This document shows positions 2,716-61,370 of a stretch of 64,000 bases of DNA, in pieces; the stretch's first letter is position 1; each line of letters starts with the position of its first letter. The position numbers and the translations under genes are program-made. The stretch is taken from the NCBI GenBank assembly GCA_976226885.1, contig OZ320316.1, forward strand, positions 102,796,001 through 102,860,000. Reading direction: 5' to 3'. A model generated the notes under the pieces. It did not search any database and was not told where the DNA came from. It was given only the letters and a program-made list of their open reading frames with translations. Source of the stretch: Iphione sp. A-MEVVRFRX5. Its lineage: Eukaryota.

Positions 2716-2783
<68 letters not shown>

Positions 2784-2800: not shown

Positions 2801-3639
2801 CTCTGGCTGTCCCGTCTCCTCCCCCTTCCCCCTGGAAACAATGTCCCTTATCATCTCTGCAGCCATGGCCCATCAGTGGGCATTGCCTCGCCTTTATTGA
2901 GAGTGTGACCCCATGTCAGTGGCCTTACCGCTGAGATCGAGGAGATTCGGGGGACGAATCCAGCTATGACAGCTCCATGTGAGCGATATTTGGCGCCTTA
3001 TCCCTTTCCCAGAGGCCTAAGTCGAGAGCAGTGTCTAGACTCCCCAAGTCCCTCCTCTCTACCTCCCCCCCCCTACCTCCGCAGTATGTAATTCTTTCGG
3101 AGCCCTGGGGGGAGGGGGGAGTCGGCGTCGGCGGTGTGAATAGGAAACGAATGCTGCCTTTACCTGATATATGGCGTTGTATAAAGCCGGATTATGTTCA
3201 ATTATTTAGAATGAATATACTTGTAGGCTATCCCAGGGCCCCGCTTCTCTCGAACCTTCTCCAACGGGCTCAATAATACATCGTGGCCGACGCGCCATGA
3301 AAACGGCGCGTTTCCGCATCCGCCGATTGCCTCTGATTTTTCACCGCAGGAAGGAGATAGACTTCTCCTTTGTAGCTTGGATCTCTCTGTCTCGAAGCTA
3401 TCATTTTCTGCTTCGTATTCCCTCACCGTCGTTTAGTCCTTTTCTTAGTACCACGGCCACATTCCTTTACACATCTCTGATAGTTAGAAATATTATCAAG
3501 TTGCCTTCACCTCTATCCTCCTAATAGCCCCCTTGCTGCCTTATCTTTCAATATTAGCATTCAGCTCTGAGGCTTTTAAGCGGCCGACCTGCACGTATAC
3601 CAGTTACGTTCTGTTGCAAGCGTAATGCTGTCAATTCAG

Positions 3640-6260: not shown

Positions 6261-6987
6261 TCGAGATAGAAAAAAAACACGCTTTGTTATCGGAGTTTTC
6301 TCTTCAAGCGATTTATGAATGTTCCAATAAGTTTCTTTGTGCGATGTTATCTCTAGGAATGAGTCATGGCCAGGCTCGAAAATCTAGCATCAGTCCTCCA
6401 CGTATCTAAATTGCTCATACCTTTTAATCTTTCGCATGGATCAGTATCTTAACTTGCGATGGATGGGCGCTATTTTCTTCGGAGCACCTCCTAACCAGAC
6501 TAGCGCGTAGTAGTACTTTAACGCCTAGGTAAATATAGACGTAGTACTTCATCTCCGCAACGGCTTTTTTCCTTTTCTTACCGACAAAAGAAACCAATAA
6601 CGATGATTTAAATCTCATTTTCGCCAAGAAAGAGGAGAGTTTTCCTCTCAGAACGGCCCCTGTCCAAGGCTTACAATAAGGAATAGGTTTTTGAAGGGCG
6701 ACGAAGGTTGTTTTTTTATACTAAGCTGATGAGAACGCCACGTTGTCAGGCAGGCTTTACCTTGATGCAGTGCAGAATCATAGCCAGGATAAGTATGCTA
6801 GTCAGACTGGAGAGAGGTGTGCAAGTTTCAATACAAAAATACGACTCGGAGTGAAAATGAAAGCGGAAGAAGTTGAAAACTGATATGACTTGCCTGAAGT
6901 GGTTTACAAGATGTATTAATGTAAGGTGTTAGTGTTATTGCCTTTGTTCGTGAAAGGGCAGAGTTTCGTAAATTGCAAGAGAGAGAG

Positions 6988-7035
<48 letters not shown>

Positions 7036-8699
7036 CAGACAGACAGACAAGCAGATCTAGATGTTGAGGCATATTTGTATCTCTCTTTCTCTTAATCTAC
7101 CTACCTATATCTACACTGTTATTATAAATCAGGGTTGTCTCTGCCGGACATTACCCTGTGTGTATGCCATGGGTTATTTTCTATTTTGACGGGTACTTTA
7201 TATAACCTCATCTTTTCTTCTCATTTATCTGACTTTTCTCAGCGGTGGACCTCGCTGCCGATCGCTGACCCCTCTGACACTGGGGGCAGGCTACCTTTGT
7301 GAATAATCACCAAAAAGGTCTCTCACCGGGAGCACAGATTTCGGCTGTTTTCCACGTACGTTAATAGTATACGCAGTAACTTACCATCAAGACGGCTCAT
7401 GGGAGCAGAACAGGTTTCCTCTACCTGCGAGTTGCCCTGTCAGAATGGACGAATCTCCAGACACCATTACGACTATTTTACCATTTGTGATGCCATAATA
7501 TGGGGCCCACCAATCAGATTACGTACAATATTTCAAGACATTGTCTGAGGAAACAGTAAACATAAGTGTTGTAACGGGTAGTTTCCACTGCTGGTGATCC
7601 ATCCATTAAGGCCAATATGGGGGCAGAGTTGCCTGGGTAGGTTATTTCATAGAAAATGAACCGCTAGGCCAGCCGAACTATGCCCTTAATTCTGAGTTGC
7701 TCTCTTATGTTAGCCACACGTTGGATTGTAATTGTTTTAGCAGCAATGGTGGAATAATAGAGCCCTGCGGCATGCCCCGTTCGTAACAGACAGCGATCAG
7801 TACTAGCAGTGTTAGAGTTTTGAATCTTTTCATGACTAGTAGCTAAACTAGTCCACTTTCCAACGCCAACGACAAAAGGCGTGCTGTGAGATCCGAAACT
7901 CACATTTACATTTTGTGTATCATTTCACGAAAACATAGATTCTTTTAAAGTTTATGGTAAGGTAAATAGACATATTCCACTTCTGATTTCCCCTCTGCAT
8001 GTACATATTCATATTTTATTGACCAGATCAAATTCACTTAACAGCAGAGGCCGGAACCATGAGGATAGTTGATATATATACATATATATATATTTAATAT
8101 TCAAAAATGGAAGGGCTCAAAACGAAAGATAGTGACATTTTCTTCTAGGAGAAAATCCACTTATATGCACAGTATTTTCGAGTCACATCTGGTAAAATAC
8201 AATTCCCAGTTCCCTATCATCTCATGACAGCATGGAAGGTGGCGGGTGTGTGCATGGGTGGGTGGGTGGATGGGTGAGTGGGTGGGTGGGAGGTAGCATG
8301 GGCTTCTCCACCCGCCTAGCTCTGCAGGAAGGAAAAATCTAATCGCTGCCGTAACAGACCTCCCCCCCCCATTCCCCTCTCTACTTGGTAGAATGTCTGT
8401 CTGCCATTCTCGTAACATCTCTACTAAGAGAGACTTGTTCACCGTAGTCCACACGAGTCGGATAGGACGGCCGACGTCAGCTTTCCAGGGCTGGTTGACC
8501 GAATGGTGTGTAGTGCTTGGTTTATAACTGCTTTGCCAGCATTTATGGGTTTCTCGTGTGATTGTCTGGATTTGCCAGTCTTGCCTGCTTGTTTGGCTGT
8601 AAGTGGCTTATTTTCCCCCGCGAGCAGAACTCGAATTATATACATATATGTACAACGTATATATTTGTGTGTGATTGTGGAGAGGGTTGAGCAGAAAGG

Positions 8700-34235: not shown

Positions 34236-34241
34236 CTTCTT
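34236..34241 (+). repeat. Left target-site duplication CTTCTT
   Basis: Identical hexamer immediately follows the right terminus (55320-55325); 6-bp TSDs are characteristic of Polinton integrases. Confidence 0.95.
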
Positions 34242-34306
34242 AGTAGTGTGAGGGGAGCAACCTTCAGCTCTCGTTTCGCAGGAAGTGACGTCACCACAGC
34301 AGAGAG
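34242..34306 (+). repeat. Left terminal inverted repeat (65 bp)
   Basis: Exact reverse complement of 55255-55319; similarity continues a few bases (AGAGGTCAA) past an AG-run length difference. Confidence 0.95.
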
Positions 34307-34844
34307 AGAGAGAGGTCAAGGGTCAAGGGTCAAGGGTCGTAGACAGGAAGTGGCGTCATACGTCAGTCACACTTCACACTTCAATAAATATGTCGGGCAA
34401 GTGGAGATAATGATGTAGGTGGAGATGAATAGATAAGAAGGGGGTTGTATCTAGAGTGGAATGTCATAGGCAGGGAATGAAGAGGTCAGATAAGAGTGAT
34501 GTACTCACAGTGTGGAGGATAGGATACTAGAGAGAGAGAGAGAAGTGGTGTTTATAATGAAGGAATACTTGAACGATATTGGTTTTTTTTTTTTGTCGTA
34601 CTGCTTCAGATAGTCAGGTCGTTGTGTAGCGATCCCACTTCACCTCGTTTAATGATTGGAACAGGAACAAATAATGGTGGTGAAAGAGCTACAGGTGTTT
34701 TTTGAACAAAGATGGATCAGACATCGTGGATGACTAATGAGTTAATAAGAACATAAGATAGTACGGCATGTATATATATAACCCTGTACGATGATTGAAT
34801 GGGTAGGATTCGATGTACAAAAACTGCAGCTATACGTACTTATA

Positions 34845-35090
34845 ATGGCTGAGAAGCAAATAGTGGAGGCAAGGAGGTGGTTACGGACTGAGAAGAGTCA
34901 GAAGGAAAGCCGTTGTCAGGACTATGAGGATGGTGAAAGCAGCAGCAAGGTTTCAGTGACAAGGAGGAGGATGAGGAAGAAGAAATTGGTGAAGAGACTG
35001 CGTAGGTGTATGAAAAAACTGAAGAAGATAAAAAAGTCGATCAGGAGGACGAAACAAATGGCAGAGAGGGCTAACTTGTCAAAAGAAGAG
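34845..35090 (+). CDS. Putative exon 1 of spliced pPolB gene (Arg/Lys-rich, MAEKQ...LSKEE)
   Basis: ATG at 34845, open frame to donor GAG|GTGAGT at 35091 (phase 0). Confidence 0.6.
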
Positions 35091-35189
35091 GTGAGTACGT
35101 GTACTGTAAGTTTAGCAAAGTCACACTTGTAGTAGTAAGAGAGCGAGTGAGTGGGTCAGGGAAGTATATATTTGGCATCTTAATTTCAG

Positions 35190-35402
35190 AGGAGTATACT
35201 TAGCGAGTTCATGATGGGATTCGAAGATGAAGCCGTAGGCAGCTGTATGGAGATGGACGAGCCTGAGGGGGTGCAGCAAGTTTGTGTTGAAGAAGAACCA
35301 GTTATTGATGATGGAGTTGTTGTGTTTGAAGAGGCGAGTTGTCCCAGTTACGACGACCTTTCTCAGTTGGATAAAGGAGATTGTTCGAACGTTTTGTCAG
35401 AG
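35190..35402 (+). CDS. Putative exon 2 of spliced pPolB gene (acidic)
   Basis: Acceptor TAATTTCAG| at 35189, in frame with ORF 35211, donor GAG|GTATGT at 35403; 213 nt, phase 0-0. Confidence 0.62.
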
Positions 35403-35625
35403 GTATGTATTGCTTGGTTACAGATCAGCTTGACTCAGAAAGTAAAGTTGAGGTTTTATTAATCAAGTGACACGTAGATAGTTGTAGGTTATGATTGAAA
35501 CTACACACATATATATAATTGATGATCCATGTTAGTAAGTAGCTAAATAGAGTTCATTCAGTATAATGACTTGATTTTCATAAGTGTAGTGCAACTGCGA
35601 GTAACCGCTATTAAATTCATTGTAG

Positions 35626-35826
35626 CAAACGGGTGACGGAGATCAGAACATCGTCAGTAGTTGCAGTCATAGTTCGTCAAAGGTGTCATCATGCAGTGAC
35701 GAGGTAGCTGCAGCAGTAGCATCAATAACACCGCAAAATGTTGTTCAAGGAACGGATGCAGCATCTGTTTTGACGTCAGCAACGGCAGCATCAGCTTGGC
35801 AGGGACAGCTCATATCTCCTGTTCAA
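35626..35826 (+). CDS. Putative exon 3 of spliced pPolB gene (Ser/Ala-rich)
   Basis: Acceptor TTCATTGTAG| at 35625, open and in frame with ORF 35683, donor CAA|GTAAAG at 35827; 201 nt, phase 0-0. Confidence 0.5.
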
Positions 35827-35934
35827 GTAAAGAAGTATTTTGTAGATGAAGTAGAAGTGCAATTGTGGCTACTCGTAAGGATGAAGACTGAAGTCTAACT
35901 GTGCAGTAATGAAAAACGTTTGCTATGTTCATAG

Positions 35935-36018
35935 ATGGCGCCAGAGGTTCTAACAGACATGCCTTCAACATCGGAGCTGTCAAATAGGATATATTCCTGC
36001 GTAGAGACTATTGCACCG
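35935..36018 (+). CDS. Putative exon 4 of spliced pPolB gene (MAPEVLTD...TIAP)
   Basis: Acceptor GTTCATAG| at 35934, 28 open codons, donor CCG|GTAGGT at 36019; phase 0-0. Confidence 0.5.
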
Positions 36019-36275
36019 GTAGGTAGGAACAATGAACAGCTAAACATGTTTGTTAATTGTGATGTACAGTTATAGGTTAAACATGATATAGAGCACGTTG
36101 GTTGGCGCAACATTGTTATTATTATTATTGTCTATTTACAGAGAGAGTAGTGCTCATATCGTAATTCAATAGGTTGATAAAATAAGTAGTGCTTATTAGC
36201 AGGCGTATCATTGTTAGTGCGTGACATGGTATCAGCAGGTTGCTTATAGATGGTATTATTGTTGTCGACTTACAG

Positions 36276-39200
36276 AGAATAGAGCATGAGTGCTCATATT
36301 GCAAGAGGAAATTTGTGTACAAAGCAAACGCAGTCAAGCACAGCGTGAAGTGTGTGGAAAAACAGAAACTGACTTGTGAAGTATGCAGGCGTCGGTTTCA
36401 GACACTGGAGCAGAAAGTAAATCATGTGTCAAGGTTCCATGGCAGAAAGAAGAAAGAAGACAAGGTTCGGTCGTATAAGTGCCGCACGTGCGACAGTTTG
36501 TTCAACTCACGAAGAGATTTGTACATTCATAATGGAGAGCAGCATGGTGGAGGTGATGAAGGTCTACAAAGTGTTCCTTGGCAGAGAGGTGAAGAGCCCT
36601 GGTTGGTGGATGTAGATGCTAACAATGCTGACGCGGGTCAGGTAATAGCACAGAATAAGAGAGAGGAGAGATCGATAGAGTTCAAGAGAGTGTACAATGC
36701 AAACAAGCGACATATCTTGGCACAGCATAGTGAAGGGAGCGTGGCAGCTACATACAACTTCCCTACAAATAACCTGGCCGATGGAGGAGTGGAACTCGCG
36801 AGACATATGGAGGAAGTGTACAACAATGAACAGAGGGCATTTAAAGTTAATGTAGGGTTTGGGGTGATTTTGAGACATGTAGAAACGGACAAGTACAGAT
36901 ACTTTGTGCCGTACAAAAACAGTACAGTTCTGTCAGAGCCTGCAATGGTGTCATCACGTAGAGATATGGATGATGTGATTGAGAGGTTGAAGGAGGTTGA
37001 TACAGACAACTACTTCACTGTTAACAGGCCAGACACGAAGTGGATTGCCGAAGGGGTAGTGAATGTGACATATTTTGTGTCGAGGCTATCGTATCCTTTA
37101 GGAAGTGGATTTTTGCCTCGTTTTCTGAAGTCAAGACCGTACATTGCACCTCTAGATCAGTTTGGTGATGGCAGACCTATAGCGGATGAGCTGTGCGCGT
37201 TCAGGTGCTTAGCCATGTTTGAAGGAAAGAGTACCACAATAGAGAATTGTGTTCTTCAGTACTACCAAAAATGGAGGCAGTTCATAGCCGGAAAGAAAGG
37301 TGTTGACATAGGGGATGATGCTACAAAGTATAGAGGTGTTTCGCTTGACGAATTGTCTGAGTTCGAAGAATGTTTTGAAGTCGGATTGTATGTGTTTGAA
37401 CTGACAAGAGAAAATTCAGTTGTTATGCACTATAGGCCATTTCACAGGTTCAACAGGACGATGTACGTAAATGTATACGAAGGTCACTTATCTTATGTGA
37501 GTGACTTTGCAAGGTATGCTCAAAAGTTTGAGTGTGTGCTGTGTAGGAGATGTTTTAAGACTCGTTTCAACATTGAGAGACACATGAAGTCGTGTCCACT
37601 AAGGACAAGATACGTGTATAAAGGAGGCTTCTACACAAGTCCGCAGACAGTGTTTGAAGAGTTGGATGCAGTAGGCATTGTAGTTCCCGAACAGGACAGG
37701 ACATACAATGATTTTGCAGTGTATGATTGTGAGTCCATGTTAAGGGGAATGCCAGAAGGAGAAAGCCCAAAGTTAAAGTGGGTTCACAGGCATGAGGTAA
37801 TATCTGTGGCAGTTTGCAGCAACGTACCAGGTTATGACAGGCCAGAGTGTTTTATTTCAGGAGACATGGAGGTGTTAGTAGGCAACATGGTGGATTATTT
37901 GGAGAAGATACAAGAGGAGGCAGCTAGGAGAGCAGAAATGAAATGGCATGACGTGTTTGAGCAGTTGGAGGTAATGAAGAAAAGGTTGAGCGAGAGACAG
38001 GCACATGTTACTCAAGCTGTTTCAACATCACCAACGATGCTGGCAAATGAGTGCGAGGCTGATGATAGCCAAGATGAAGGGGAAAGTGAGAATGGATGTG
38101 GAGACAAACAGATGACTACACTACTGACAAGGTTGGAAGAAAGGTTTACGACTTATGCGAATACGTTACCTGTGTTGGGATTTAATTCAGGTAAATATGA
38201 CTTCAATGTGATGAAGGCAGTTCTCCTCAGGCGGCTGAAAATGAGGTGCAGAGAATTATTTGTCATCAAGAGAGAGAACACGTACATAACAGTAGACAAT
38301 GGTACATTGAAATTCTTGGACATCTCACAATATCTCACACCAGGAGTGTCGTATGTGAAGTTCTTGAAGGCCTATGGGGTAGAGGAACAGAAGGGAGTGT
38401 TTTGCTATGAGTACTTGGACAGTCCCGAGAAATTAGCCGTCACTGGCATTCCACCACACGAGGCGTTCTACTCATCAGTGAAGAACAAAAACATTTCAGA
38501 AGAAGAGTATGAAGGCGTGAGAAGGACATGGATTAGTGAAGGGATGCAGACATTGCAAGATTTGCTTGAGTATTACAACAAGTTGGACGTTGGTCCATTT
38601 GTAGAAGCGGTAATACGTTTACAGAAGTTTTATTTTGAACGCGGCATGGACGTGTTCAAGGTTGCAATGTCTGCTCCTGGGGTGGCAAGGCGGTTGCTGT
38701 TCCAGTCTGCGCGGAAGGAAGGGGCGTCATTTCCGACGTTCAGTCACAGAGATGAGGATCTATATCAGGCGTTCAAGAAGAATATAGTCGGAGGTCCTGC
38801 GATTGTTTTTACATGTGCTCATGAGAAGGACGTTACGAATATTCGCGACTCGTTCAACAAGTGTAAAACGATATTGGGTCTGGATGCAAACTCGTTGTAT
38901 CTGGGATGCATTGGCATGGAGCATGCGACGACCACCTATGTGAGGAGACGAGCAAAGACAGGATTTGCCCCAGAGAAGATGTCAGCATCAGTTATGTGCA
39001 TTGTGTGGCTGGAATGGGAAGCCAAGGAGAGGAGGATGATGATTCACCATGCCCAAAACAGGTACGAGGGTGAAGTGAGGATAGGACCGTTCAAAGTTGA
39101 TGGTATTGCTTTTGATACTAACACAGTGTTCGAGTACAATGGCTGCTACTATCATGGGCATACGTGTATGAACGGGAAAATGAAAGAAGTGGAACGCAAG

Positions 39201-41087
39201 AAAAGAGAGAGTAGGACAGCCATGAGGAAGCAGTACATAGAGAGAAACGGTTACACAGTTGTGACGATGGAAGAGTGTAGGTTTGCCCATACGCTGAGGG
39301 ACAGTGCTGAACTAAGAGAGTTCACAGCAAAGTTTTCAACAGCATTTACGCAAAAGTACAGGGGTCGTGTGACAGAAGTCCAGATATTGAACGCTGTGCG
39401 AGAGGGACTATTCTTTGGAGCTCTGGAAGTGGATATTAAGGTGCCAGACACATGGGAGCCGGGGATGGAGAGGGCACTGCAGCCAGCAGATTATTTTGGG
39501 GAGATGTGCCCGCTGTTTGGCAATGCAACTGTGCGCATGGAGGATATAGGAGATCACATGAAGAGACACATGAAGGCAAGCAGGATGTCAGAGAGACCGA
39601 GGAGGTTGTTGGTGGGTGCGTTGAGTGCGAAGAAGACGTTGATACTCTCACATCTCTTGAAGTGGTACTTGAATCATGGTCTGGTTGTATCAAAGATTTA
39701 CCAAACAGTGGAGTTCGTTCCAAGAAAGTGTTTCAGGACATTTGTAGGAGATGTGACGGAAGCAAGGCGACAAGGAGACACAGATGTTAACAAGGCAATT
39801 ATAGCAGATACAATGAAGCTGATCGGAAATTCAGCATATGGCGGAATAATAATGCAGAAAGAAAAACAAAACTGCGTCAAGTACTTCACGAGTACTAGCC
39901 AGGCTGTGTCTGCTGTGAACTCGCCTCGGTTTAGGAGGATGGTGGAGATGAGGGGCTTGTATGAAGTCGAACTGGCAAAGACGAGAATCACACTAGATAT
40001 GCCTGTCTACGTCGGGTTTTCAATCTTACAGTATGCCAAATTGGTGATGTTGTCCTTCTATTACGATTGTGTTGATAGATGGATCAACAGGGAGAAGTAC
40101 GAGTATGTGACCATGGACACTGACAGTGCATACATTGCACTGGCGGAGCCGTCACTAGTAGATGCTATGACAGAGGAGGGAAAGAGAGCATATGAGGCCG
40201 ACACACTGGGGAAGTGTGATGACAAATTGACTCCAGCATGGTTTATGCGCGAGTGCTGTGAAGCTCACCGGAAGTTTGACAGACGCGTACCATGCCTGAT
40301 GAAGGAAGAAGCCAGGGGTGAAAAGATAGTTGCATTAACAAGCAAGACTTATGTGTTGGAGGACAGACGGACATTCCCACCATCAATAAAAATGAGCTGC
40401 AAAGGAGTGTCAAAGGCCCATGTGGACAATGCGTTACAGACATATGAGAGTGTACTCAAGACGCGTCAGAGCAGAGAAGGGAAGAACAAGGGGTTCAGAG
40501 TATGGTTGGGAACAATATGTACGTATGAATTGGTGAGAGACGGCTTCACATATTTCTATGCGAAGCGACGAGTTCATGAGGATGGCATACACACGTCACC
40601 CCTTCAGATAACGCTTTGTCCGTGGGAAGACGTCATGGACGGATACGTAATAATCAGCAGGCCTTGGCATGTTCTACATCCACAGTATATGTGGGGTATG
40701 ACTAATGGATTCATCTCAGCAGAGCACATGTACCTGTACAACATGGCTGTTCACCACGGAGAGCTGGACATAGCGAGGGCGATAGCCGGCTCGTCAGACA
40801 GAGCAGAGTTCAAGGCATATGGAGAAATGGTAGAACAGAACAGGGAGTGGAAGGAATTTGTGAGGTTGCAATCAATGATGGACATATCACGTGAGAAGGT
40901 CAGAATCTTGGGCGCACTTGTGATGAAAGAACTACGTGACGACAGGCGCATTGTTTTCGCCTCCCCCGATAGGTTCTGGGGAGTAGGTATGGACGAATCG
41001 GTGATAGAGCAGACTAGTCCGGAGGAGTTCAGGGGACGCAATAGGTTAGGCGAAGTGTGGGAGTGTGTCAGAGCTGAGTTGAGATAA
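36276..41087 (+). CDS. pPolB: Protein-primed family B DNA polymerase (main exon; zinc fingers, vOTU-like, exonuclease, VSR-like insert, polymerase, C-terminal NADAR-like domain)
   Basis: ORF 36240-41087. ExoI YDCES, ExoII GFNSGKYD, ExoIII YNKLD, motif A LDANSLY, motif B KLIGNSAYG, motif C MDTDS. Acceptor GACTTACAG| at 36275 is in frame; the ORF has no early ATG. Confidence 0.97.
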   Translation, partial: RIEHECSYCKRKFVYKANAVKHSVKCVEKQKLTCEVCRRRFQTLEQKVNHVSRFHGRKKKEDKVRSYKCRTCDSLFNSRRDLYIHNGEQHGGGDEGLQSVPWQRGEEPWLVDVDANNADAGQVIAQNKREERSIEFKRVYNANKRHILAQHSEGSVAATYNFPTNNLADGGVELARHMEEVYNNEQRAFKVNVGFGVILRHVETDKYRYFVPYKNSTVLSEPAMVSSRRDMDDVIERLKEVDTDNYFTVNRPDTKWIAEGVVNVTYFVSRLSYPLGSGFLPRFLKSRPYIAPLDQFGDGRPIADELCAFRCLAMFEGKSTTIENCVLQYYQKWRQFIAGKKGVDIGDDATKYRGVSLDELSEFEECFEVGLYVFELTRENSVVMHYRPFHRFNRTMYVNVYEGHLSYVSDFARYAQKFECVLCRRCFKTRFNIERHMKSCPLRTRYVYKGGFYTSPQTVFEELDAVGIVVPEQDRTYNDFAVYDCESMLRGMPEGESPKLKWVHRHEVISVAVCSNVPGYDRPECFISGDMEVLVGNMVDYLEKIQEEAARRAEMKWHDVFEQLEVMKKRLSERQAHVTQAVSTSPTMLANECEADDSQDEGESENGCGDKQMTTLLTRLEERFTTYANTLPVLGFNSGKYDFNVMKAVLLRRLKMRCRELFVIKRENTYITVDNGTLKFLDISQYLTPGVSYVKFLKAYGVEEQKGVFCYEYLDSPEKLAVTGIPPHEAFYSSVKNKNISEEEYEGVRRTWISEGMQTLQDLLEYYNKLDVGPFVEAVIRLQKFYFERGMDVFKVAMSAPGVARRLLFQSARKEGASFPTFSHRDEDLYQAFKKNIVGGPAIVFTCAHEKDVTNIRDSFNKCKTILGLDANSLYLGCIGMEHATTTYVRRRAKTGFAPEKMSASVMCIVWLEWEAKERRMMIHHAQNRYEGEVRIGPFKVDGIAFDTNTVFEYNGCYYHGHTCMNGKMKEVERKKRESRTAMRKQYIERNGYTVVTMEECRFAHTLRDSAELREFTAKFSTAFTQKYRGRVTEVQILNAVREGLFFGALEVDIKVPDTWEPGMERALQPADYFGEMCPLFGNATVRMEDIGDHMKRHMKASRMSERPRRLLVGALSAKKTLILSHLLKWYLNHGLVVSKIYQTVEFVPRKCFRTFVGDVTEARRQGDTDVNKAIIADTMKLIGNSAYGGIIMQKEKQNCVKYFTSTSQAVSAVNSPRFRRMVEMRGLYEVELAKTRITLDMPVYVGFSILQYAKLVMLSFYYDCVDRWINREKYEYVTMDTDSAYIALAEPSLVDAMTEEGKRAYEADTLGKCDDKLTPAWFMRECCEAHRKFDRRVPCLMKEEARGEKIVALTSKTYVLEDRRTFPPSIKMSCKGVSKAHVDNALQTYESVLKTRQSREGKNKGFRVWLGTICTYELVRDGFTYFYAKRRVHEDGIHTSPLQITLCPWEDVMDGYVIISRPWHVLHPQYMWGMTNGFISAEHMYLYNMAVHHGELDIARAIAGSSDRAEFKAYGEMVEQNREWKEFVRLQSMMDISREKVRILGALVMKELRDDRRIVFASPDRFWGVGMDESVIEQTSPEEFRGRNRLGEVWECVRAELR

Positions 41088-41168
41088 AAAGAGAAGTCAC
41101 TGCTACTACTACTGCAGTCACTGGATGAGCGACACAAATACCACAACGAACAATAACAACGTTGAGCA

Positions 41169-41801
41169 ATGGAGGAAGTACTGATGAGTGAATATAGGTT
41201 TGCAACACCGAGTACAATTATGGTGAGCGGGGCCACGTCATCAGGAAAAACCCGATTTGTAACAAGGTTGATCAGAGAGAGACGTAGGATGTTTGAGTCA
41301 CCTGTGCCGGAGAAGATAGTTTACTGTTATGGCGCATGGCAGGACGTGTTTGATGAGATGATTAGGGAGGGAGGGGTTGAGTTCCGTGAAGGGATCAATG
41401 TGGACGGTATAAAACACGTGATGGGGACATTGTTGATAATAGACGATTTGATGGACGACGCTGTACAGAGTGAGAAGATCAGAGATCTGTTCACTCGCGG
41501 CTCACACCACGACAGGATCACCGTGGTACTCTTGTTGCAAAACCCATTCTGCCAAGGGAAGTGTGCGAAGTCTATTGCACTGAACTCTCAGTACATGGTT
41601 CTGTTCCGTAATCCCCGTGACATACACCAAATAGGAAGACTTGGCAGTCAGCTGGGAATGCCAGAAGTGAAAGAGGCATACAGAGACGCTGTGAAGGAAT
41701 TGTACGGATATTTGGTGATCGATCTCCACCCTCGCAACTCGACAGACGTTAAGTTGACCAGCCACATATTTCCCGGAGAAGAGCTTGTGTGGTACAAATA
41801 G
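41169..41801 (+). CDS. A32/FtsK-like DNA packaging ATPase
   Basis: Walker A GATSSGKT, Walker B LLIIDD, and the LFTRGSHHDRITVVLLLQN motif typical of Polinton ATPases. Confidence 0.95.
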   Translation: MEEVLMSEYRFATPSTIMVSGATSSGKTRFVTRLIRERRRMFESPVPEKIVYCYGAWQDVFDEMIREGGVEFREGINVDGIKHVMGTLLIIDDLMDDAVQSEKIRDLFTRGSHHDRITVVLLLQNPFCQGKCAKSIALNSQYMVLFRNPRDIHQIGRLGSQLGMPEVKEAYRDAVKELYGYLVIDLHPRNSTDVKLTSHIFPGEELVWYK

Positions 41802-41815
41802 GTGTCGGAGAGACG

Positions 41816-42379
41816 ATGTCGCTGTCGCGGTTGAGGGACAGCTCAAGCTTTATTCGCCTGATACTATCAAGCTCGAGTCGGACACAGATCGAGGCTTTGT
41901 TCGATACGGCAACTGTAGGCCAGTTAGATACGATACGAGAAATTGCCCACAACTTGTTGGTGCTGCCAGCAGAAGAAGGCGTTCGAAGGGAAGTAGCGAA
42001 GAGGCGGTCACTCTTGACCAAGTTGGCCAACCGTAGGGTATCGTACCGTTCCAAGTCGGCACTTGTCAGCAAGTACTACCGTCAGCTGTTTCACTTGTTT
42101 CGTATTGTGAGGGACGAGCTGTGGTCATTAACATCGCCTTGTAGTGGTGACGGTTTTGGTGAGGCAGAGGTAGACGACGTACCACCACCACTGCCATCGC
42201 AGCATTGGCCGTTTCCACCACCGCCATCTCGACCTGACAGGCGGCGGCAACAGCCGCAGCAGCAGCAGCATCTCCCAATAGAAGACGCAGTAGTGGACCG
42301 TGCCGACGACAACGGCAACGACGAGGGTTACGACACGACTGACGGTTGCGACGATACTACACCTGCTCTTGCGGCATGA
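41816..42379 (+). CDS. Polinton-type small helical protein with low-complexity tail (187 aa)
   Basis: ATG at 41816 just after ATPase stop. The QLDTIREIAHNLL motif resembles a conserved Polinton protein usually found beside the ATPase; the stop overlaps the next ATG (ATGA). Confidence 0.7.
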   Translation: MSLSRLRDSSSFIRLILSSSSRTQIEALFDTATVGQLDTIREIAHNLLVLPAEEGVRREVAKRRSLLTKLANRRVSYRSKSALVSKYYRQLFHLFRIVRDELWSLTSPCSGDGFGEAEVDDVPPPLPSQHWPFPPPPSRPDRRRQQPQQQQHLPIEDAVVDRADDNGNDEGYDTTDGCDDTTPALAA

Positions 42380-42468
42380 GGAAATTGGTGTGTGTGCCTT
42401 ACGACCGTTATTTGTCCCTTGTGGAATGTCAGCAGCAGCAACAGCAACAGCAACAACACAATAACACC

Positions 42469-42504
<36 letters not shown>

Positions 42505-42783
42505 TCAATAGACCGGCCAGCAACAGTGGCACCATCCTCATTAGTGGTGGAGGAGGAGGAAAAGGAAAAGGAGGGCAGAGGAGGAGGAACGTCGATGCTG
42601 GAATCGGAATTAGAGGGTGACCCGACACCCGCAGCGGCAGCACAAGTGCATGTGCTACGGCCTCAAGTGAGACAGCGAGCGCCGCGACGGAGGGCGCCAC
42701 AAGCACCACCACCGCCGGGCCTTCCGTTGGTAGGTCGCAAAAAGAGGGCGCTTGACTGGACGGCGGGATGGATAAGTATCTGA
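42376..42783 (+). CDS. Polinton small low-complexity protein (MRKLVCVPYDRYLSL...GWISI, 135 aa)
   Basis: ATGA overlap with the upstream ORF and 16-nt overlap with the integrase; N-terminal K-LVP-Y-L-type motif and C-terminal Trp typical of such Polinton ORFs; polyQ/polyS/polyE runs. Confidence 0.65.
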
Positions 42784-43868
42784 GTGGGATCTACTTCGAT
42801 CCCCGTGAACCTGAATCTTTCGGTGGAGTCTTGGCCCTGCATAGGCGCAGTCGGGCAGACGGACGGGCGTATACGCGTCGCCAGATAGAGGAGTGGTTGC
42901 GTGCGCAGGAGGCCTATACTCTGTTCGCCCCATCGAGACTGAGCGGGGGTGTGAAACGTCCGCGGGTAGTCGTATCAGACAAGTTCGATCAGTTTGATGC
43001 AGACACGGCCAATATGTCGACATGGGAAGATTTTAACAGCGGCATTGGCTATTTCCTTGTTGTGATTGACATTTTCACTCGCTATGCGTGGACACGGCTC
43101 CTGCGCAGTCTGAGGGCGAAGGATACGCTTGCCGCACTCCGTTCAGTGATGGATGAGCGCAAATGTCGGGTCCTTCGCACAGATGGTGGGAGTGAGTTCA
43201 ACAACCGCTGGATGCGCCGTTACTTGCTCGACACAGGCGTGAAGCATGTCGTGACGCGCAACGAAGTTAAGGCAAACTATGCGGAACGTTTAATCAAGAC
43301 GCTGAAGACACGCCTTACACGTGACATGTATCACCGTCAGTCTCACATGTGGTCTGAGCGCCTGGCCGACATTACCGATGCTTACAACCGACACTTTCAC
43401 CGCTCCATCAGCACTAGCCCAGCCGTGGCCGCTTCTGATGCCATAGACAAAGTGGACTTATGGCATAGACAATATGGCGACGCTACAACCACCGCCGTGC
43501 GTCCTTTCCGGTTGGACAAGGGTGATGTTGTCCGACTAGCACGTTTCCGTCACCCCTTCACTCGGGCTTATGATGAGCATTGGACGCATGAGCTCTTTGT
43601 CATCACTGGACGGACACGAAGTCAAGGTGTGGCCCAGTACACCATAAAGACTTGGGATAATGAAGCTGTTGAAGGGCGTTTCTATGATGAAGAACTGATG
43701 AAGGTCAACGTTGATGAGCATGCGCGCTACAAAGTGGAGAAAGTTTTGCGAAACAAGAAGGTTGCGGGTGTCGACGGGTTTGTGGTACGCTGGTTGGGCT
43801 GGCCTAGCCGCTATGACTCATGGGTGAGCAAGGATGATTTGAGTGACTTACAGCAGCAGGAGCAATAG
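42768..43868 (+). CDS. INT: Retroviral-like (rve, DDE) integrase with C-terminal chromodomain
   Basis: QFDAD, LRTDGGSEF, NYAERLIKTLK catalytic motifs; chromodomain YKVEKVL...VVRWLGWPSRYDSWV. Confidence 0.97.
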   Translation: MDKYLSGIYFDPREPESFGGVLALHRRSRADGRAYTRRQIEEWLRAQEAYTLFAPSRLSGGVKRPRVVVSDKFDQFDADTANMSTWEDFNSGIGYFLVVIDIFTRYAWTRLLRSLRAKDTLAALRSVMDERKCRVLRTDGGSEFNNRWMRRYLLDTGVKHVVTRNEVKANYAERLIKTLKTRLTRDMYHRQSHMWSERLADITDAYNRHFHRSISTSPAVAASDAIDKVDLWHRQYGDATTTAVRPFRLDKGDVVRLARFRHPFTRAYDEHWTHELFVITGRTRSQGVAQYTIKTWDNEAVEGRFYDEELMKVNVDEHARYKVEKVLRNKKVAGVDGFVVRWLGWPSRYDSWVSKDDLSDLQQQEQ

Positions 43869-43901
43869 TGTCACCATTCTTGTTTCGTCCATTCATCCGA
43901 C

Positions 43902-44312
43902 ATGTACATACTCGCTACTCCCGATTTGAGTAAAAACGCTCACCCAGGCAACACCCGCTCAGACTTTGTCGTGGACCTACAACGCCCGATTGAGTTGATC
44001 GGCAAATGGGAGTGCGCCTTGATCAATGTCTACTTTGACACCCCTTCGTCTGCCGAGCGTGATCTCGATGTCATTATATGCTCTGACCTAGTAGCTAACA
44101 ACTATATGACAGGTACCTTGCGCCCTGCTGTCCGTGTTACAAGGCCGACTTCAGCAGAGTTCGCCACGCCGTGGTACTTGAGAGCTTCCTCGTGTCGTAT
44201 AGAGAGATTTAGAGTATACTGCTCTTCCTTGGACAACAAAAAGGCAGAAGTGCCCCATATCCACCGGGCTGTGTTTCATCTACGACCAAGTCGGTCATTG
44301 CCATCGTCGTGA
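43902..44312 (+). CDS. PX: Minor capsid protein (penton, PX-like), short form (136 aa)
   Basis: N-terminal HPGNTRSDFVVDLQRPIELIGKWECAL matches the Polinton penton N-x4-F-x3-L-x3-I-x-L-x-G-x-WE-x-AL pattern. Confidence 0.8.
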   Translation: MYILATPDLSKNAHPGNTRSDFVVDLQRPIELIGKWECALINVYFDTPSSAERDLDVIICSDLVANNYMTGTLRPAVRVTRPTSAEFATPWYLRASSCRIERFRVYCSSLDNKKAEVPHIHRAVFHLRPSRSLPSS

Positions 44313-44315
44313 GCC

Positions 44316-44621
44316 ATGAACTACGTTCCCTACGTCCCTCGTTCTGATGCCTTCAAGCACACAGTCCGGCGTCGGTCGCACTATGTTGGTAAGGGTCCAC
44401 CGTTGACACTGGTGTCGCCTGTTGAGCAGAGTGTTGAACGGGCTAAGGCCAGCCTTGTCAAGAATGTACCTCTGGTTAAAAACAAGCGAACATCATCTCC
44501 CTCATCACATTGTCCTGCGAAGCAAAAGAGACGACAGACAAAGCAACCGGCGAAGAAGAGGAAGGCACAATCACCCACAAACAAAAAGAAAACGACTACA
44601 CGTAAGTTCCGCAAGCACTAG
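44316..44621 (+). CDS. Basic putative virion core (DNA-condensing) protein (101 aa)
   Basis: YVPY start, YVGKG, LVSPVEQSVERAK motif, Lys/Arg-rich C-terminal half; lies between penton and MCP. Confidence 0.7.
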   Translation: MNYVPYVPRSDAFKHTVRRRSHYVGKGPPLTLVSPVEQSVERAKASLVKNVPLVKNKRTSSPSSHCPAKQKRRQTKQPAKKRKAQSPTNKKKTTTRKFRKH

Positions 44622-44626
44622 TGACC

Positions 44627-46009
44627 ATGACGCATGTGCTTCAGGACTCGGACGATGGCTTTGGGCTTGATCTCGACCTGTTTCATGTGCCACCTACCCA
44701 GACCGGCATTACGGAACAATATGTGAAGGAGTTCTTACCCATCGGAGACTTAAGCCATGGCAGCATAGTCGAGTTTAATGTACCGAACGACTCGCTTGAT
44801 TACATCATGTTACACAAAACTCGCCTCCGCATTGATGTGCAAATTCTGAAAGACGATGATACTCCAATTGGCACTGTAGACAAGGTCGGCTTTATCAACA
44901 TGGCAGCCTCCACCATCTTTCAGCGTATGGAACTTGCTCTGCAACAGACTGTCGTGAACACTGGTGTTGGAGGAGTGTACCCATACAAGGTCATGCTTGA
45001 TACACTCTTCCATGCCGGGTTGTCTGATGAGCTGGGCTGGCTGCGTGTTGCTGGGTATGCAAAGGACAATAACATATACATGGACGACATCAACCGTAAT
45101 ACCGGTCTTGGCACACGGGCAGACAAGACGGCCGGAGGCAAGGTTGCGCGTCTGATGACTCGCCTATTTTCTGGTGTAAGTGACCAGTCACGACCAATAA
45201 TTAACGGTGTGCCAATCAACCTCAAGCTCTATCCTGCATCTGACGCTTTTCGCCTGATCTATCCAGCCCTCACTGCTTATACAACCACAGACGGTGACGG
45301 TGACGGTGAGGGAGGAGGAGGAGGAGGAGGAGGAGGAGGAGGAGCTGTTCGAACATCTAAGACATATCGTCTGAAACTGGTCAGAGCTGTCTTGTTCATT
45401 ACATTTGCACGAGTTCATGAAGGCCTTATCGTTCAGCACCGAGCCCAGCTTGAGAAGTCCCCAGCACTGTACCCATTTCTACGCAGTGACTTACGGGCTT
45501 TCACCGTATCTCAGAACAGCCACGAGTTTGCTACAGAGAACATATTCCAAGACCGTGTACCACTGACAGTCGCCCTTGTTTTGGTTGATGCTGCTGCGTT
45601 TGCTGGCAACCACGAAAGGAACCCATTTGACTTCAAGAACTTCTCGGCCAACTACATATCATTTGAAGTGAACGGAGAGTCGCGCCCCGGCCGCCCCTAT
45701 CAGCCCGACTTTGATGCCGGCCACATTGCAACTCCCTACGCAGCACTGTTCGACTCCTTCTCTAGGTGGTATCGACGCCAACTCCCAGACATTACAGAGT
45801 CTGATTTCACCACTGGTTACACTATCTTCGTATTTGACCTAGATAAGGGACGTGAGAAGGACCTCCTGACTCCACTCCGACGAGGCAACACCCGCCTGAC
45901 TGTGAAGTTTGCAGCTGCTCTCCCTGTCACCATTACAGCATTAGTAGATGCCACGTTTCCTTCACTTATGAGCATTGACCTGGCTCGAAATGTCACTCTC
46001 ACCACCTAG
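44627..46009 (+). CDS. PY: Major capsid protein (double jelly-roll, PY) (460 aa)
   Basis: LDLFHVPPTQ, IVEFNVP, PINLKLYP, NPFDFKNF, GYTIFVFDL and C-terminal IDLARNV motifs of Polinton MCPs. Confidence 0.93.
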   Translation: MTHVLQDSDDGFGLDLDLFHVPPTQTGITEQYVKEFLPIGDLSHGSIVEFNVPNDSLDYIMLHKTRLRIDVQILKDDDTPIGTVDKVGFINMAASTIFQRMELALQQTVVNTGVGGVYPYKVMLDTLFHAGLSDELGWLRVAGYAKDNNIYMDDINRNTGLGTRADKTAGGKVARLMTRLFSGVSDQSRPIINGVPINLKLYPASDAFRLIYPALTAYTTTDGDGDGEGGGGGGGGGGGAVRTSKTYRLKLVRAVLFITFARVHEGLIVQHRAQLEKSPALYPFLRSDLRAFTVSQNSHEFATENIFQDRVPLTVALVLVDAAAFAGNHERNPFDFKNFSANYISFEVNGESRPGRPYQPDFDAGHIATPYAALFDSFSRWYRRQLPDITESDFTTGYTIFVFDLDKGREKDLLTPLRRGNTRLTVKFAAALPVTITALVDATFPSLMSIDLARNVTLTT

Positions 46010-46487
46010 TGCTCTTACAAGCAGTGATATAAGACTTTATCTTGAACCCTATAACGGTCCTACGTGGGTTGACTCATATGAATTGCTCCCCACCCATCCC
46101 TTACCCTGCGTTCCTGTGCCCTATGTGTTTGTCGTAAACACTGACCAGGTTGGCTGTCCTGGTCTTCACTGGGTTGCCATATTAATCTTGCCAACCGACA
46201 TTGAAACTGGTCAACGACAGGTTGGAGAGTTTTTTGACTCTCTTGGGATGCCTCCTCAGCACTACCATCCTCATATTCAACGTTTCCTGTCTACGAACTG
46301 TGCTTGTTACGTTTACTCACATGTACGTGTACAAGGAAATATGCCAGTGTGCGGTCACTTCTGTCTAGCGTATATATACTCACGCTTGCACGGTGAGAGT
46401 TATGAGTCATTCATCCTTTCATTTAGTAACAATTTAGCATGTAATGATCGTGCTGTTGTTGATCACTATTATACTCATCATATCTAA
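45990..46487 (+). CDS. PRO: Adenain-like (C5) cysteine maturation protease (165 aa)
   Basis: VVNTD...PGLHWVAI (His), EFFDSLG (Asp), RVQGNMPVCGHFC (Gln/Cys); overlaps the MCP end by 20 nt. Confidence 0.93.
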   Translation: MSLSPPSALTSSDIRLYLEPYNGPTWVDSYELLPTHPLPCVPVPYVFVVNTDQVGCPGLHWVAILILPTDIETGQRQVGEFFDSLGMPPQHYHPHIQRFLSTNCACYVYSHVRVQGNMPVCGHFCLAYIYSRLHGESYESFILSFSNNLACNDRAVVDHYYTHHI

Positions 46488-46731
46488 CTGGTGTACTCAC
46501 TTGCTCACTCACATGCACGTCGTCCATTTCAATCATCTGCAGTGTGTAATTGCGCCACGACACCATTCGACGTTATGTAATAAGAGACATAGAGCGGGAT
46601 ATAGGTCATATGACACGTATACAGTATTGGTGGATTGAGAAACATTGCTTACAGATGTATACGATGTATTAATGTAATAAAAGTTATGTATACTTTATCA
46701 CTGCTGTGTTGTTTCATGCTTTCGTACCATA

Positions 46732-61239: not shown

Positions 61240-61370
61240 NNNNNNNNNNNNNNNNNNNNNNNNNNNNNNNNNNNNNNNNNNNNNNNNNNNNNNNNNNNNN
61301 NNNNNNNNNNNNNNNNNNNNNNNNNNNNNNNNNNNNNNNNNNNNNNNNNNNNNNNNNNNNNNNNNNNNNN
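61240..61370. other. Assembly gap (N run)
   Basis: Run of N. Confidence 1.

What the first reader, a model, noticed from the sequence alone, without database searches (positions are those of the whole stretch)
40640..41087. NADAR (YbiA/DUF1768)-like domain fused to the C-terminus of the viral protein-primed DNA polymerase
Seen: after the polymerase ends (about ...HEDGIHTSPL) the ORF continues ~150 aa with FISAEHMYLYNMA...IA...AYG...W...MMDISREKV...RIVFASPDRFWGVG...RGRNRLGEVWECVRAEL. This follows the NADAR pattern F-x-S-x-EH...K...W...M...KF...LVEASP-D-x-x-WG-x-G...G-x-N-x-LG...R-x-x-L. Established: NADAR proteins are N-glycosidases; those paired with DarT1 remove ADP-ribose from guanine in DNA, and guanine DNA ADP-ribosyltransferases exist in animals (pierisins, shellfish CARP-1). 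Inference: a polymerase-tethered NADAR could strip or sense ADP-ribose on the template ahead of replication, a counter-defence against a host DNA ADP-ribosylation defence. The usual Lys after EH is Met and the Glu of VEASP is Phe, so it may be a divergent or binding-only module. I do not know of this fusion as a standard Polinton feature.
Basis: partly seen in the sequence, partly recalled or inferred. Interest (0 to 1): 0.9.

Follow-up and report, generated by a model that had tools for sequence, protein, structure and literature searches.

The report
NADAR-fold domain on Polinton DNA polymerase
A virus-like transposon (Polinton/Maverick) in this window has a real NADAR-type "ADP-ribose remover" domain at the end of its DNA polymerase, as does a whole branch of related elements from marine invertebrates, but the residues such enzymes need are mostly replaced, so it is probably no longer a standard enzyme.

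Summary
ORF 36240..41087 (+) is one open 1615-codon frame. Its last ~150 residues (nt 40638-41084) match Pfam NADAR above threshold (54 bits) and fold with pLDDT 92.7. The only solved-structure matches with E below 1 are Phytophthora NADAR (8BAU, TM 0.72) and YbiA. The upstream part folds as a phi29-type protein-primed polymerase.

The gene lies in a 21,078-bp Polinton (34242..55319) with perfect 65-nt inverted ends, a 6-bp target duplication and an rve/chromo integrase.

The fusion is not an artefact. A 1628-aa relative is 44% identical end to end, and at least 73 protein clusters carry polymerase tail plus NADAR. Most family members stop where the NADAR begins. NADAR-bearing polymerases group together in a polymerase tree.

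The hydrolase reading is weakly supported. The Glu/Lys/Glu set shown by mutagenesis to matter is complete in 53 of 71 standalone relatives. It is complete in 4 of 74 fused ones and in none of 20 full-length proteins. This copy has Glu, Met, Phe, while fold-defining residues stay 81-91% conserved.

Best reading: an anciently captured ADP-ribose-processing module, now mostly a non-canonical, probably binding or structural appendage. One relative carries DUF4326, another ADP-ribose-linked domain, in the same place. I found no published report of the fusion.

The parts
34242..55319 (+). Whole Polinton/Maverick-type element, 21,078 bp
   Evidence: It is bounded by perfect 65-nt terminal inverted repeats and an identical 6-bp direct duplication. 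It contains the polymerase, a candidate packaging ATPase and an integrase on the + strand.
34236..34241 (.). Left target-site duplication (CTTCTT)
   Evidence: The same hexamer directly follows the right end.
34242..34306 (.). Left terminal inverted repeat
   Evidence: 65 nt, 100% complementary to 55255-55319. Identity is lost beyond 65 nt.
55255..55319 (.). Right terminal inverted repeat
55320..55325 (.). Right target-site duplication (CTTCTT)
36240..41087 (+). Single open frame for the multidomain polymerase (1615 codons plus stop). It holds zinc fingers, an N-terminal region, exonuclease/palm/thumb with an endonuclease-like insert, and NADAR. There are no stops or frameshifts inside the frame. 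The true 5' end (start codon or upstream exon) is not resolved.
   Evidence: It is 44% identical over the full length to P0002.
36285..36545 (+). N-terminal C2H2 zinc-finger cluster (ORF residues 16-102)
   Evidence: Weak Pfam zinc-finger hits and PDB zinc-finger matches. Conserved in relatives.
37677..40625 (+). [quoted passage not shown]
   Evidence: The model has pLDDT 89.6 and pTM 0.88. Its best PDB matches are phi29 DNA polymerase (E 1e-13, TM on target 0.64-0.68), well ahead of other family B polymerases at 0.36 or less. PF03175 is weak in the window (14.2 bits) but on record for relatives of 40-43% identity. Most relatives end at a position matching ORF residues about 1457-1469.
39033..39302 (+). 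Endonuclease-like (Vsr-type) insert inside the polymerase
   Evidence: phrog_13076 'endonuclease', E 0.0059. One relative is named a very-short-patch-repair endonuclease by its source. Weak evidence, not followed up.
40638..41084 (+). NADAR-fold domain (ORF residues about 1467-1615), followed by the stop at 41085-41087
41169..41801 (+). Candidate genome-packaging ATPase, starting 81 nt after the polymerase stop
   Evidence: Pfam Pox_A32, 19.1 bits, below the cut-off of 22.8
42768..43868 (+). Retroviral-type integrase with C-terminal chromodomain
   Evidence: PF00665 at 34.1 bits (cut-off 32.6) and PF00385 at 27.5 bits (cut-off 25.1)

Best explanation
The C-terminal ~150 residues are a genuine NADAR-fold domain. 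An ancestor of one branch of marine-invertebrate Polinton polymerases captured it once, or at most a few times, and it has been inherited with the polymerase ever since. The capture was most likely selected as an ADP-ribose-processing counter-measure tied to the replicase. Invertebrate RNA viruses embed NADAR in replicase polyproteins in a comparable way, and one sister polymerase carries a DUF4326 domain in the same slot.

In this copy, and in most of the branch, the canonical ADP-ribose-phosphate-binding and catalytic residues have been replaced while the fold is kept. The domain is therefore most likely no longer a canonical guanine-ADP-ribose N-glycosidase. It probably persists as a non-catalytic appendage of the polymerase thumb, with a structural role or a role in binding a ligand, DNA or a partner.

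Shown: domain identity, fusion, inheritance, residue loss. Inferred: the ancestral role and the present non-catalytic role.
For: Domain identity.

Fusion real and inherited:
- P0002 (1628 aa) is 44% identical from the zinc fingers to the NADAR end.
- 19 other proteins of 1350-1836 aa have the domain at their extreme C-terminus.
- 73 representatives of 50%-identity clusters carry polymerase tail plus NADAR.
- The four closest polymerase relatives (45-52% identity) all carry PF08719.
- In a neighbour-joining tree of 123 polymerase cores, 22 of 23 full-NADAR proteins and 12 proteins with a shortened extension sit in one contiguous part. Four to five state changes suffice.
- NADAR and polymerase divergence are correlated: r 0.74, mean pairwise identity 24% against 41%.

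Residue loss (residue names follow P. nicotianae NADAR in PMC11543638; share of standalone relatives against share of fused members):
- E43-equivalent Glu: 93% against 43%.
- K50-equivalent Lys: 82% against 45%.
- E125-equivalent Glu: 87% against 5%.
- K75-equivalent Lys: 90% against 14%.
- W133-equivalent Trp: 97% against 59%.
- All three of E43, K50 and E125: 53 of 71 against 4 of 74, and 0 of 20 full-length proteins.
- The window has Glu, Met, Phe, plus Glu at the R79-equivalent position. P0151 and P0152 have the same six-column pattern, so this is a lineage state and not a recent hit.
- Fold residues remain at 81-91% in the fused set.

Mutagenesis: alanine substitution at the K50-equivalent and alanine or asparagine substitution at the E125-equivalent abolish efficient guanine de-ADP-ribosylation in E. 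coli C7 NADAR (PMC11543638).

Context:
- P0155, 43% identical in the polymerase, has DUF4326 (70.6 bits) at residues 1489-1569 of 1576. That domain is proposed to process ADP-ribose phosphates and is often fused to NADAR, Macro or SLOG in DNA viruses (PMC9503650).
- NADAR sits in replicase polyproteins of invertebrate RNA viruses.
Against: - No activity or binding was measured. A different residue could reach the pocket in three dimensions, and I had no model coordinates to check.
- The window keeps the E43-, K75-, W89-, D130- and W133-equivalent residues, so part of the ADP-ribose pocket survives.
- Four fused fragments keep the full set, so some lineages may still be active.
- Many database members are integrated copies of unknown age. 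Some column variation could therefore be post-insertion decay, although the contrast with the well-kept fold residues argues against that.
- The tree has no support values, and 11 of the NADAR-bearing sequences entered through the NADAR search itself.
- The active-site mapping rests on one MAFFT alignment.
Confidence: 0.55

Rival explanations
1. One reading: the domain is an active, polymerase-tethered N-glycosidase. It removes ADP-ribose from guanine, or cytosine, in template DNA and so counters host DNA ADP-ribosyltransferases of the CARP-1/pierisin type.
For: - NADARs from four families reverse G- and C-ADP-ribosylation (PMC11543638, PMC12945103).
- CARP-1 homologues are mainly in Bivalvia, and named relatives of this polymerase family come from bivalves, gastropods, echinoderms and amphioxus.
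- The window keeps the E43-, D130-, W89- and W133-equivalent residues.
- 4 of 74 fused members keep the complete set.
- DUF4326 sits in the same slot in P0155.
- The fold has been retained over deep divergence.
Against: - The K50-equivalent is Met, the E125-equivalent is Phe and the R79-equivalent is Glu in this copy. Mutating the first two equivalents inactivates a tested NADAR.
- No conserved substitute appears in the family. The E125 column holds Tyr, Phe, Gln, Val, Glu, Ile and others.
- No ADP-ribosyltransferase was found in the element. The host genome could not be examined.
Confidence: 0.2
2. The domain is a relic without present function. It is kept only because it was fused long ago and deleting it is neutral or slightly harmful to polymerase folding, and it is on its way to loss.
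For: - It evolves faster than the polymerase core: 24% against 41% mean identity.
- A group of 12-14 relatives has a shortened extension of 121-129 aa that matches only the two ends of the family profile.
- A few nested relatives lack the domain.
- The catalytic columns are scattered.
Against: - Fold-defining residues are still 81-91% conserved across members whose polymerases are only about 40% identical. Neutral drift over that depth would have erased this.
- The domain model and the polymerase-plus-domain model are both high-confidence, with pTM 0.88 for the whole.
Confidence: 0.15
3. Artefact: the tail is a separate gene joined to the polymerase by misassembly, read-through or a missed intron or stop.
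For: None found. The only open point is that no transcript evidence was available.
Against: - There is one continuous frame with no stop or frameshift.
- The same junction occurs in 19 other long proteins from independent assemblies at 26-44% identity in the tail.
- The next gene starts 81 nt after the stop.
- The linker is short and modelled at pLDDT of about 72-77.
Confidence: 0.02
4. A YbiA-like metabolic N-glycosidase acting on riboflavin-pathway intermediates or other small ribosides.
For: Similarity to TIGR02464 and YbiA.
Against: - The score of 46.6 bits is below the equivalog cut-off of 73.7.
- The YbiA-family last-strand Glu is missing.
- Nothing in a replicase fusion or in the element suggests a riboflavin role.
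Confidence: 0.03

Closest known systems
NADAR superfamily, YbiA-type (Phytophthora nicotianae NADAR, PDB 8BAU; E. coli YbiA, PDB 2B3W)
   Same: Same fold and same Pfam family: TM 0.72 and 0.63, profile E 6e-37 and 9e-28. The E43-, W89-, D130- and W133-equivalent residues and the Gly-x-Asn-x-x-Gly motif near the C-terminus are kept.
   Different: The K50-equivalent is Met, the E125-equivalent is Phe and the R79-equivalent is Glu. It is the C-terminal domain of a 1615-residue viral-type polymerase rather than a standalone protein of about 160-190 residues.
DarT1-associated NADAR antitoxins (DarG1) and phage orphan NADARs that counter DarTG1
   Same: Same superfamily. The idea of a mobile element carrying NADAR to undo DNA ADP-ribosylation is the obvious model (PMC11543638, PMC11825919).
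   Different: There is no partner transferase in the element. The residues that define those enzymes (E88, K95, D171, K115 of E. coli C7) are not all present. The host is eukaryotic.
NADAR domains embedded in replicase polyproteins of invertebrate RNA viruses (nido-like, hepe-like, picorna-like)
   Same: A NADAR physically tied to the replicase of a virus of invertebrates. These polyproteins appear among the structural matches.
   Different: Those are RNA viruses with RNA-dependent polymerases. Here the partner is a protein-primed DNA polymerase of an integrating DNA element.
NADAR domains in retrotransposons (Ectocarpus Gypsy Pol, oyster Tx1 LINE ORF1; PMC12477816)
   Same: Independent captures of NADAR by eukaryotic mobile elements, one of them in a bivalve.
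   Different: A different element class and a different position in the protein. Those authors describe them as YbiA-family domains. No DNA polymerase is involved.
Described Polinton polymerase architecture: terminal-protein domain, vOTU protease, exonuclease, palm with TPR1/TPR2 (PMC11161782)
   Same: A long N-terminal region ahead of a phi29-like exonuclease/palm/thumb.
   Different: That description has no C-terminal domain after the thumb. This branch adds NADAR there, one relative adds DUF4326, and the family also has N-terminal C2H2 fingers and an endonuclease-like insert.

Membership tests
NADAR superfamily (Pfam PF08719) | Profile match above the curated gathering score | tested here: met
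   54.1 bits against 35.1. Profile against PDB NADAR: E 6.3e-37.
NADAR superfamily (Pfam PF08719) | [quoted passage not shown] | tested here: met
   Model pLDDT 92.7. The only PDB matches with E below 1 are 8BAU (TM 0.72) and 2B3W (TM 0.63). Viral-library matches are all NADAR proteins.
NADAR superfamily (Pfam PF08719) | Conserved Glu (E43-equivalent) and Lys seven residues later (K50-equivalent) | tested here: not met
   Glu is present (ORF residue 1495). The Lys position is Met (ORF residue 1502).
NADAR superfamily (Pfam PF08719) | Charged or His residue in the last strand: Glu in the YbiA family, Asp in BC4488, His in phage NADAR | tested here: not met
   Phe at ORF residue 1573. Only 5% of fused members have Glu there, against 87% of standalone relatives.
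NADAR superfamily (Pfam PF08719) | N-glycosidase or ADP-ribosyl hydrolase activity | not testable with these tools
   No biochemical data.
DarT1-NADAR type toxin-antitoxin or counter-defence pair | A cognate ADP-ribosyltransferase encoded next to the NADAR | tested here: not met
   No transferase or DarT match in any element ORF tested (Pfam; PADLOC).
[quoted passage not shown] | phi29-type fold of exonuclease, palm and thumb | tested here: met
   The top nine PDB matches are phi29 polymerase chains (E 1e-13 to 3e-11, TM on target 0.63-0.68). Other family B polymerases reach 0.36 or less.
[quoted passage not shown] | Pfam PF03175 match above threshold | tested here: inconclusive
   14.2 bits in the window against a cut-off of 25.8. 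It is above threshold in relative P0155 at 42.9 bits and on record for many others.
[quoted passage not shown] | TPR1 and TPR2 insertions | not tested
Polinton/Maverick element | Terminal inverted repeats and a 6-bp target-site duplication | tested here: met
   65-nt perfect repeats and the identical hexamer on both sides.
Polinton/Maverick element | Retroviral-type (rve) integrase | tested here: met
   PF00665 at 34.1 bits against 32.6, plus a chromodomain.
Polinton/Maverick element | A32/FtsK-type packaging ATPase | tested here: inconclusive
   Pox_A32 at 19.1 bits, below 22.8.
Polinton/Maverick element | Double jelly-roll capsid protein, penton protein and adenain-like protease | tested here: inconclusive
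   No Pfam match for the remaining ORFs. No structure-based test was run on them.

The most novel reading that the evidence does not exclude
The C-terminal slot of this polymerase family is a dedicated anti-ADP-ribosylation station. On this reading the ancestral NADAR, and the few members that keep the full residue set, are active polymerase-tethered de-ADP-ribosylases of DNA bases that counter CARP-1-type host enzymes. The altered versions, such as this copy, have become readers that recognise ADP-ribosylated template bases rather than cutting them. That would be the first DNA-ADP-ribosylation arms race described between an animal host and a DNA virus-like element.
Probability: 0.15. Interest if true: 0.85.

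Novelty: new variant of a known kind. Interest (0 to 1): 0.6.

Why it matters
Three reasons.

**A new domain on a well-described protein.** Polinton polymerases have been described as terminal-protein, vOTU, exonuclease and palm proteins (PMC11161782). A conserved extra domain after the thumb, drawn from the NAD/ADP-ribose conflict toolkit, adds a new layer to how these elements deal with their hosts. It does so in the animal groups where DNA-guanine ADP-ribosyltransferases (CARP-1) are concentrated.

**A caution for database surveys.** Surveys list 'metazoan NADARs' in molluscs, echinoderms and Branchiostoma (PMC11125620). Named relatives of this polymerase family come from those same groups. 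Part of that record may therefore be Polinton polymerase tails rather than host genes.

**A natural series of catalytic-residue loss.** The near-complete loss of catalytic residues with a well-kept fold could guide where to look for non-catalytic roles of NADAR folds.

Tried and rejected
- Word-indexed protein searches with the NADAR part, inside the long protein or alone, found nothing. The exhaustive HMMER search showed why: relatives are at most 44% identical there.
- A single-sequence search of PDB sequences with the tail found nothing. The profile search did.
- The profile of polymerase relatives against PDB sequences was swamped by zinc-finger hits and showed no polymerase in the 60 rows listed. 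The fold search replaced it.
- Cluster look-ups gave no organism or protein names for any NADAR-bearing relative or standalone neighbour. The hosts of the NADAR-bearing branch and the donor of the domain therefore stay unknown.
- Rfam found nothing in the window.
- PADLOC found nothing in the other element ORFs, and Pfam gave them no defence-related or transferase domain.
- Literature searches pairing NADAR or YbiA with Polinton or Maverick, and ADP-ribose with adintovirus, returned no relevant paper. The large survey of viral NAD/ADP-ribose systems does not mention Polintons or protein-primed polymerases.
- Rejected readings: assembly or read-through artefact, and a riboflavin-type YbiA role (see rivals).
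- One disclosure. One search printed the commonest residue and its share, for 46 scattered alignment columns, in each of the two groups. No sequence was built from it, and I used it only for the shares quoted.
Full report
**1. What is in the sequence**

Between 36240 and 41087 the + strand carries one open frame of 1615 codons with no stop or frameshift.

Pfam finds one domain above threshold. PF08719 (NADAR) matches residues 1490-1615 with 49.2 bits in the whole protein and 54.1 bits (E 2.8e-14) in the isolated last 181 residues. The gathering score is 35.1. PHROG 1017 matches at 58.9 bits. TIGR02464, the riboflavin-type YbiA equivalog domain, matches at 46.6 bits, below its cut-off of 73.7.

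A single-sequence search of PDB sequences was blank. A profile of the tail with 85 relatives hit 8bau_A (NADAR) at E 6.3e-37 and 2b3w_A (YbiA) at 9.2e-28.

The AlphaFold model of the tail has mean pLDDT 92.7. Its only PDB matches with E below 1 are 8BAU (TM 0.72/0.69, rmsd 2.8 Å) and 2B3W (TM 0.63/0.68). In the viral structure library the named matches are almost all NADAR proteins. They come from phages, giant viruses and the replicase polyproteins of invertebrate RNA viruses.

**2. The partner protein and the element**

Residues 480-1615 were modelled with 44 relatives and gave pLDDT 89.6 and pTM 0.88. The nine best PDB matches are phi29 DNA polymerase chains (E 1e-13 to 3e-11, TM on the target 0.63-0.68). 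Other family B polymerases reach 0.36 or less. PF03175 is only weak in the window (14.2 bits). It is above threshold or on record in relatives of 40-43% identity.

Further elements of the protein and its neighbourhood:
- The N-terminal part holds C2H2 zinc fingers.
- An endonuclease-like stretch sits inside the polymerase.
- Downstream on the same strand lie a weak A32-like ATPase and an rve integrase with a chromodomain.

Perfect 65-nt inverted repeats at 34242-34306 and 55255-55319 bound the unit. The same hexamer, CTTCTT, flanks both ends. This is a 21,078-bp Polinton/Maverick-type element.

Capsid and protease genes were not identified by Pfam. A masked N run at 51302-51479 lies inside one of the element's ORFs and was left as it is.

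**3. Is the fusion real?**

An exhaustive HMMER search of 1.84 billion cluster representatives with the 181-residue tail gave 248 hits at E of 1e-3 or better. Many are proteins of 1350-1836 residues whose match lies at their extreme C-terminus.
- P0002 (1628 aa) is 44% identical to the window protein across 1635 aligned columns, from the first zinc finger into the NADAR part.
- Six such long proteins were scanned with Pfam. Four carry NADAR above threshold (48.8-61.8 bits) and two have a sub-threshold match of 30-32 bits.
- In all, 73 representatives carry both the last ~30 residues of the polymerase and the NADAR domain.

The polymerase part alone finds 1074 relatives. The four closest (45-52% identity) all have PF08719 on record. 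Named relatives come from bivalves, a gastropod, echinoderms and amphioxus.

A family profile shows where the polymerase normally ends. Of 123 polymerases sampled:
- 77 stop within about 40 residues of a point that corresponds to ORF residues 1457-1469;
- 23 continue into a full NADAR;
- 14 carry a partial match, most of them an extension of 121-129 residues that matches only the two ends of the profile.

In a neighbour-joining tree of polymerase cores, 22 of the 23 full-NADAR proteins and 12 of the shortened ones occupy one contiguous part. Four to five changes of state suffice. The tree has no support values, and 11 NADAR-bearing sequences entered through the NADAR search, so this is indicative only.

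Pairwise identity of the NADAR part tracks that of the polymerase core (r 0.74) but is lower, 24% against 41% on average. Misassembly or read-through is therefore excluded in practice. The domain is an old, vertically inherited part of one branch of these polymerases.

**4. The active site**

Schuller et al. (PMC11543638) describe the P. nicotianae NADAR pocket as follows:
- E43 and E125 hold the distal ribose.
- K50, R79, W89, R93, D130 and W133 hold the pyrophosphate.
- K75 lies close by.

In E. coli C7 NADAR, mutating the K50- and E125-equivalents abolishes efficient guanine de-ADP-ribosylation. The last-strand residue defines the subfamilies: Glu in YbiA, Asp in BC4488, His in phage NADARs.

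I aligned 74 fused and 71 standalone domains from the searches and counted columns.

| Position (P. nicotianae numbering) | Standalone | Fused |
|---|---|---|
| E43-equivalent, Glu | 66/71 | 32/74 |
| K50-equivalent, Lys | 58/71 | 33/74 |
| E125-equivalent, Glu | 62/71 | 4/74 (Tyr 30, Phe 9, Gln 7) |
| K75-equivalent, Lys | 64/71 | 10/74 |
| W133-equivalent, Trp | 69/71 | 44/74 |
| All of E43, K50, E125 | 53/71 | 4/74 |

None of the 20 full-length fused proteins has all three. The four fused members that keep them are short fragments.

The window has Glu, Met and Phe at the three positions and Glu at the R79-equivalent. It keeps the K75-, W89-, D130- and W133-equivalent residues. Its two closest relatives, P0151 and P0152, share the same six-column pattern, so this is a lineage state.

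Fold-defining positions stay at 81-91% in the fused set. They are the Trp at tail position 103, Lys 119, Gly 149, Gly 165 and Asn 167. The loss is thus specific to the ligand and catalytic positions.

**5. Mechanism**

The best-supported reading has two parts.

First, the capture. A replicase-linked ADP-ribose-processing domain makes sense as a counter to NAD/ADP-ribose-based host responses. Three observations support this:
- NADAR is embedded next to the polymerase in replicase polyproteins of invertebrate RNA viruses.
- NADARs have been captured by retrotransposons, including one in an oyster.
- A sister polymerase, P0155 (43% identical), carries DUF4326 at exactly the same C-terminal slot, at 70.6 bits over residues 1489-1569 of 1576. 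DUF4326 is a rhodanese-phosphatase-type domain proposed to process ADP-ribose phosphates and is often fused to NADAR, Macro or SLOG in DNA viruses.

CARP-1-type guanine DNA transferases are concentrated in Bivalvia. That overlaps the named hosts of this polymerase family.

Second, the present state. With Met and Phe at two positions whose mutation inactivates a tested NADAR, and no conserved replacement across the family, a canonical guanine-ADP-ribose hydrolase is unlikely in this copy. The kept fold, the short and fairly confident linker, and the high pTM of the joint model point elsewhere. They suggest a domain retained for a structural or binding role on the thumb.

These last steps are inference. 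I put 0.55 on this reading, 0.2 on a still-active hydrolase, 0.15 on a functionless relic and 0.05 together on artefact or a metabolic YbiA role. That leaves about 0.05 for readings not listed here.

**6. Comparison and novelty**

The domain is a member of the NADAR superfamily by profile and by fold. It fails two residue-level features of the active families. It is not a DarT1-type pair, because no transferase lies in the element.

The published architecture of Polinton polymerases has no domain after the thumb. The survey of viral NAD/ADP-ribose systems does not mention Polintons. Targeted literature searches found no report of the fusion.

I rate it a new variant of a known kind.

Noticed in passing
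P0155 residues 1489-1569 (relative of the window polymerase): A polymerase 43% identical to the window's carries DUF4326 (PF14216, 70.6 bits) instead of NADAR at the same C-terminal slot. DUF4326 is a domain linked in the literature to ADP-ribose phosphate processing. This suggests the slot repeatedly takes up NAD/ADP-ribose-related modules.
   Followed up: partly
window 39033-39302 (+): An endonuclease-like (Vsr-type) stretch is inserted inside the polymerase (phrog_13076, E 0.0059). One relative is named a very-short-patch-repair endonuclease by its source.
   Followed up: no
window 36285-36545 and about 37527-37592 (+): C2H2 zinc fingers lie at the N-terminus and again before the exonuclease part of the polymerase, and are conserved in relatives. 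They are not part of the published terminal-protein/vOTU/exonuclease/palm scheme.
   Followed up: no
window 34242-34306 / 55255-55319 and flanking hexamers: The inverted ends are 100% identical over 65 nt and the 6-bp target duplication is intact. Together with a 1615-codon open frame this points to a recent insertion.
   Followed up: yes
window 36240 region (+): The long frame opens at a non-ATG codon by the bacterial table, and homology to relatives starts almost at once. The real start (an upstream exon or another start codon) is unresolved.
   Followed up: partly
window 51302-51479: A masked or gap N run of 178 nt lies inside the element's ORF 50027..51625. It was left as it is. Two more N runs lie at 25444-25673 and 61240-61370.
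   Followed up: no
window 44621-46009, 47106-48314 (-), 48752-49774, 50027-51625, 53404-54135 (-): Large element ORFs with no Pfam or PADLOC match. Capsid, penton and protease genes are presumably among them but were not identified.
   Followed up: partly
relatives P0207, P0203, P0258, P0187, P0227, P0255, P0235, P0205, P0228, P0224, P0219: A group of polymerases has a C-terminal extension of 121-129 residues that matches only the first ~55 and last ~40 positions of the family NADAR profile. This looks like a further-degenerated or internally shortened NADAR.
   Followed up: partly
literature (PMC11125620): Published lists of metazoan NADARs (molluscs, echinoderms, Branchiostoma) name the same groups as the named relatives of this polymerase family. 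Some 'animal NADARs' in databases may be Polinton polymerase tails.
   Followed up: no
window 34301-34340: Just inside the left inverted repeat there is a short AG run, followed by about three tandem copies of a 7-nt unit. The right end lacks them.
   Followed up: no
window 2474-2820, 6977-7042, 17589-17686, 18373-18469: Long CT/AG dinucleotide microsatellites in the flanking host DNA account for most of the 'inverted repeats' reported in the window.
   Followed up: no
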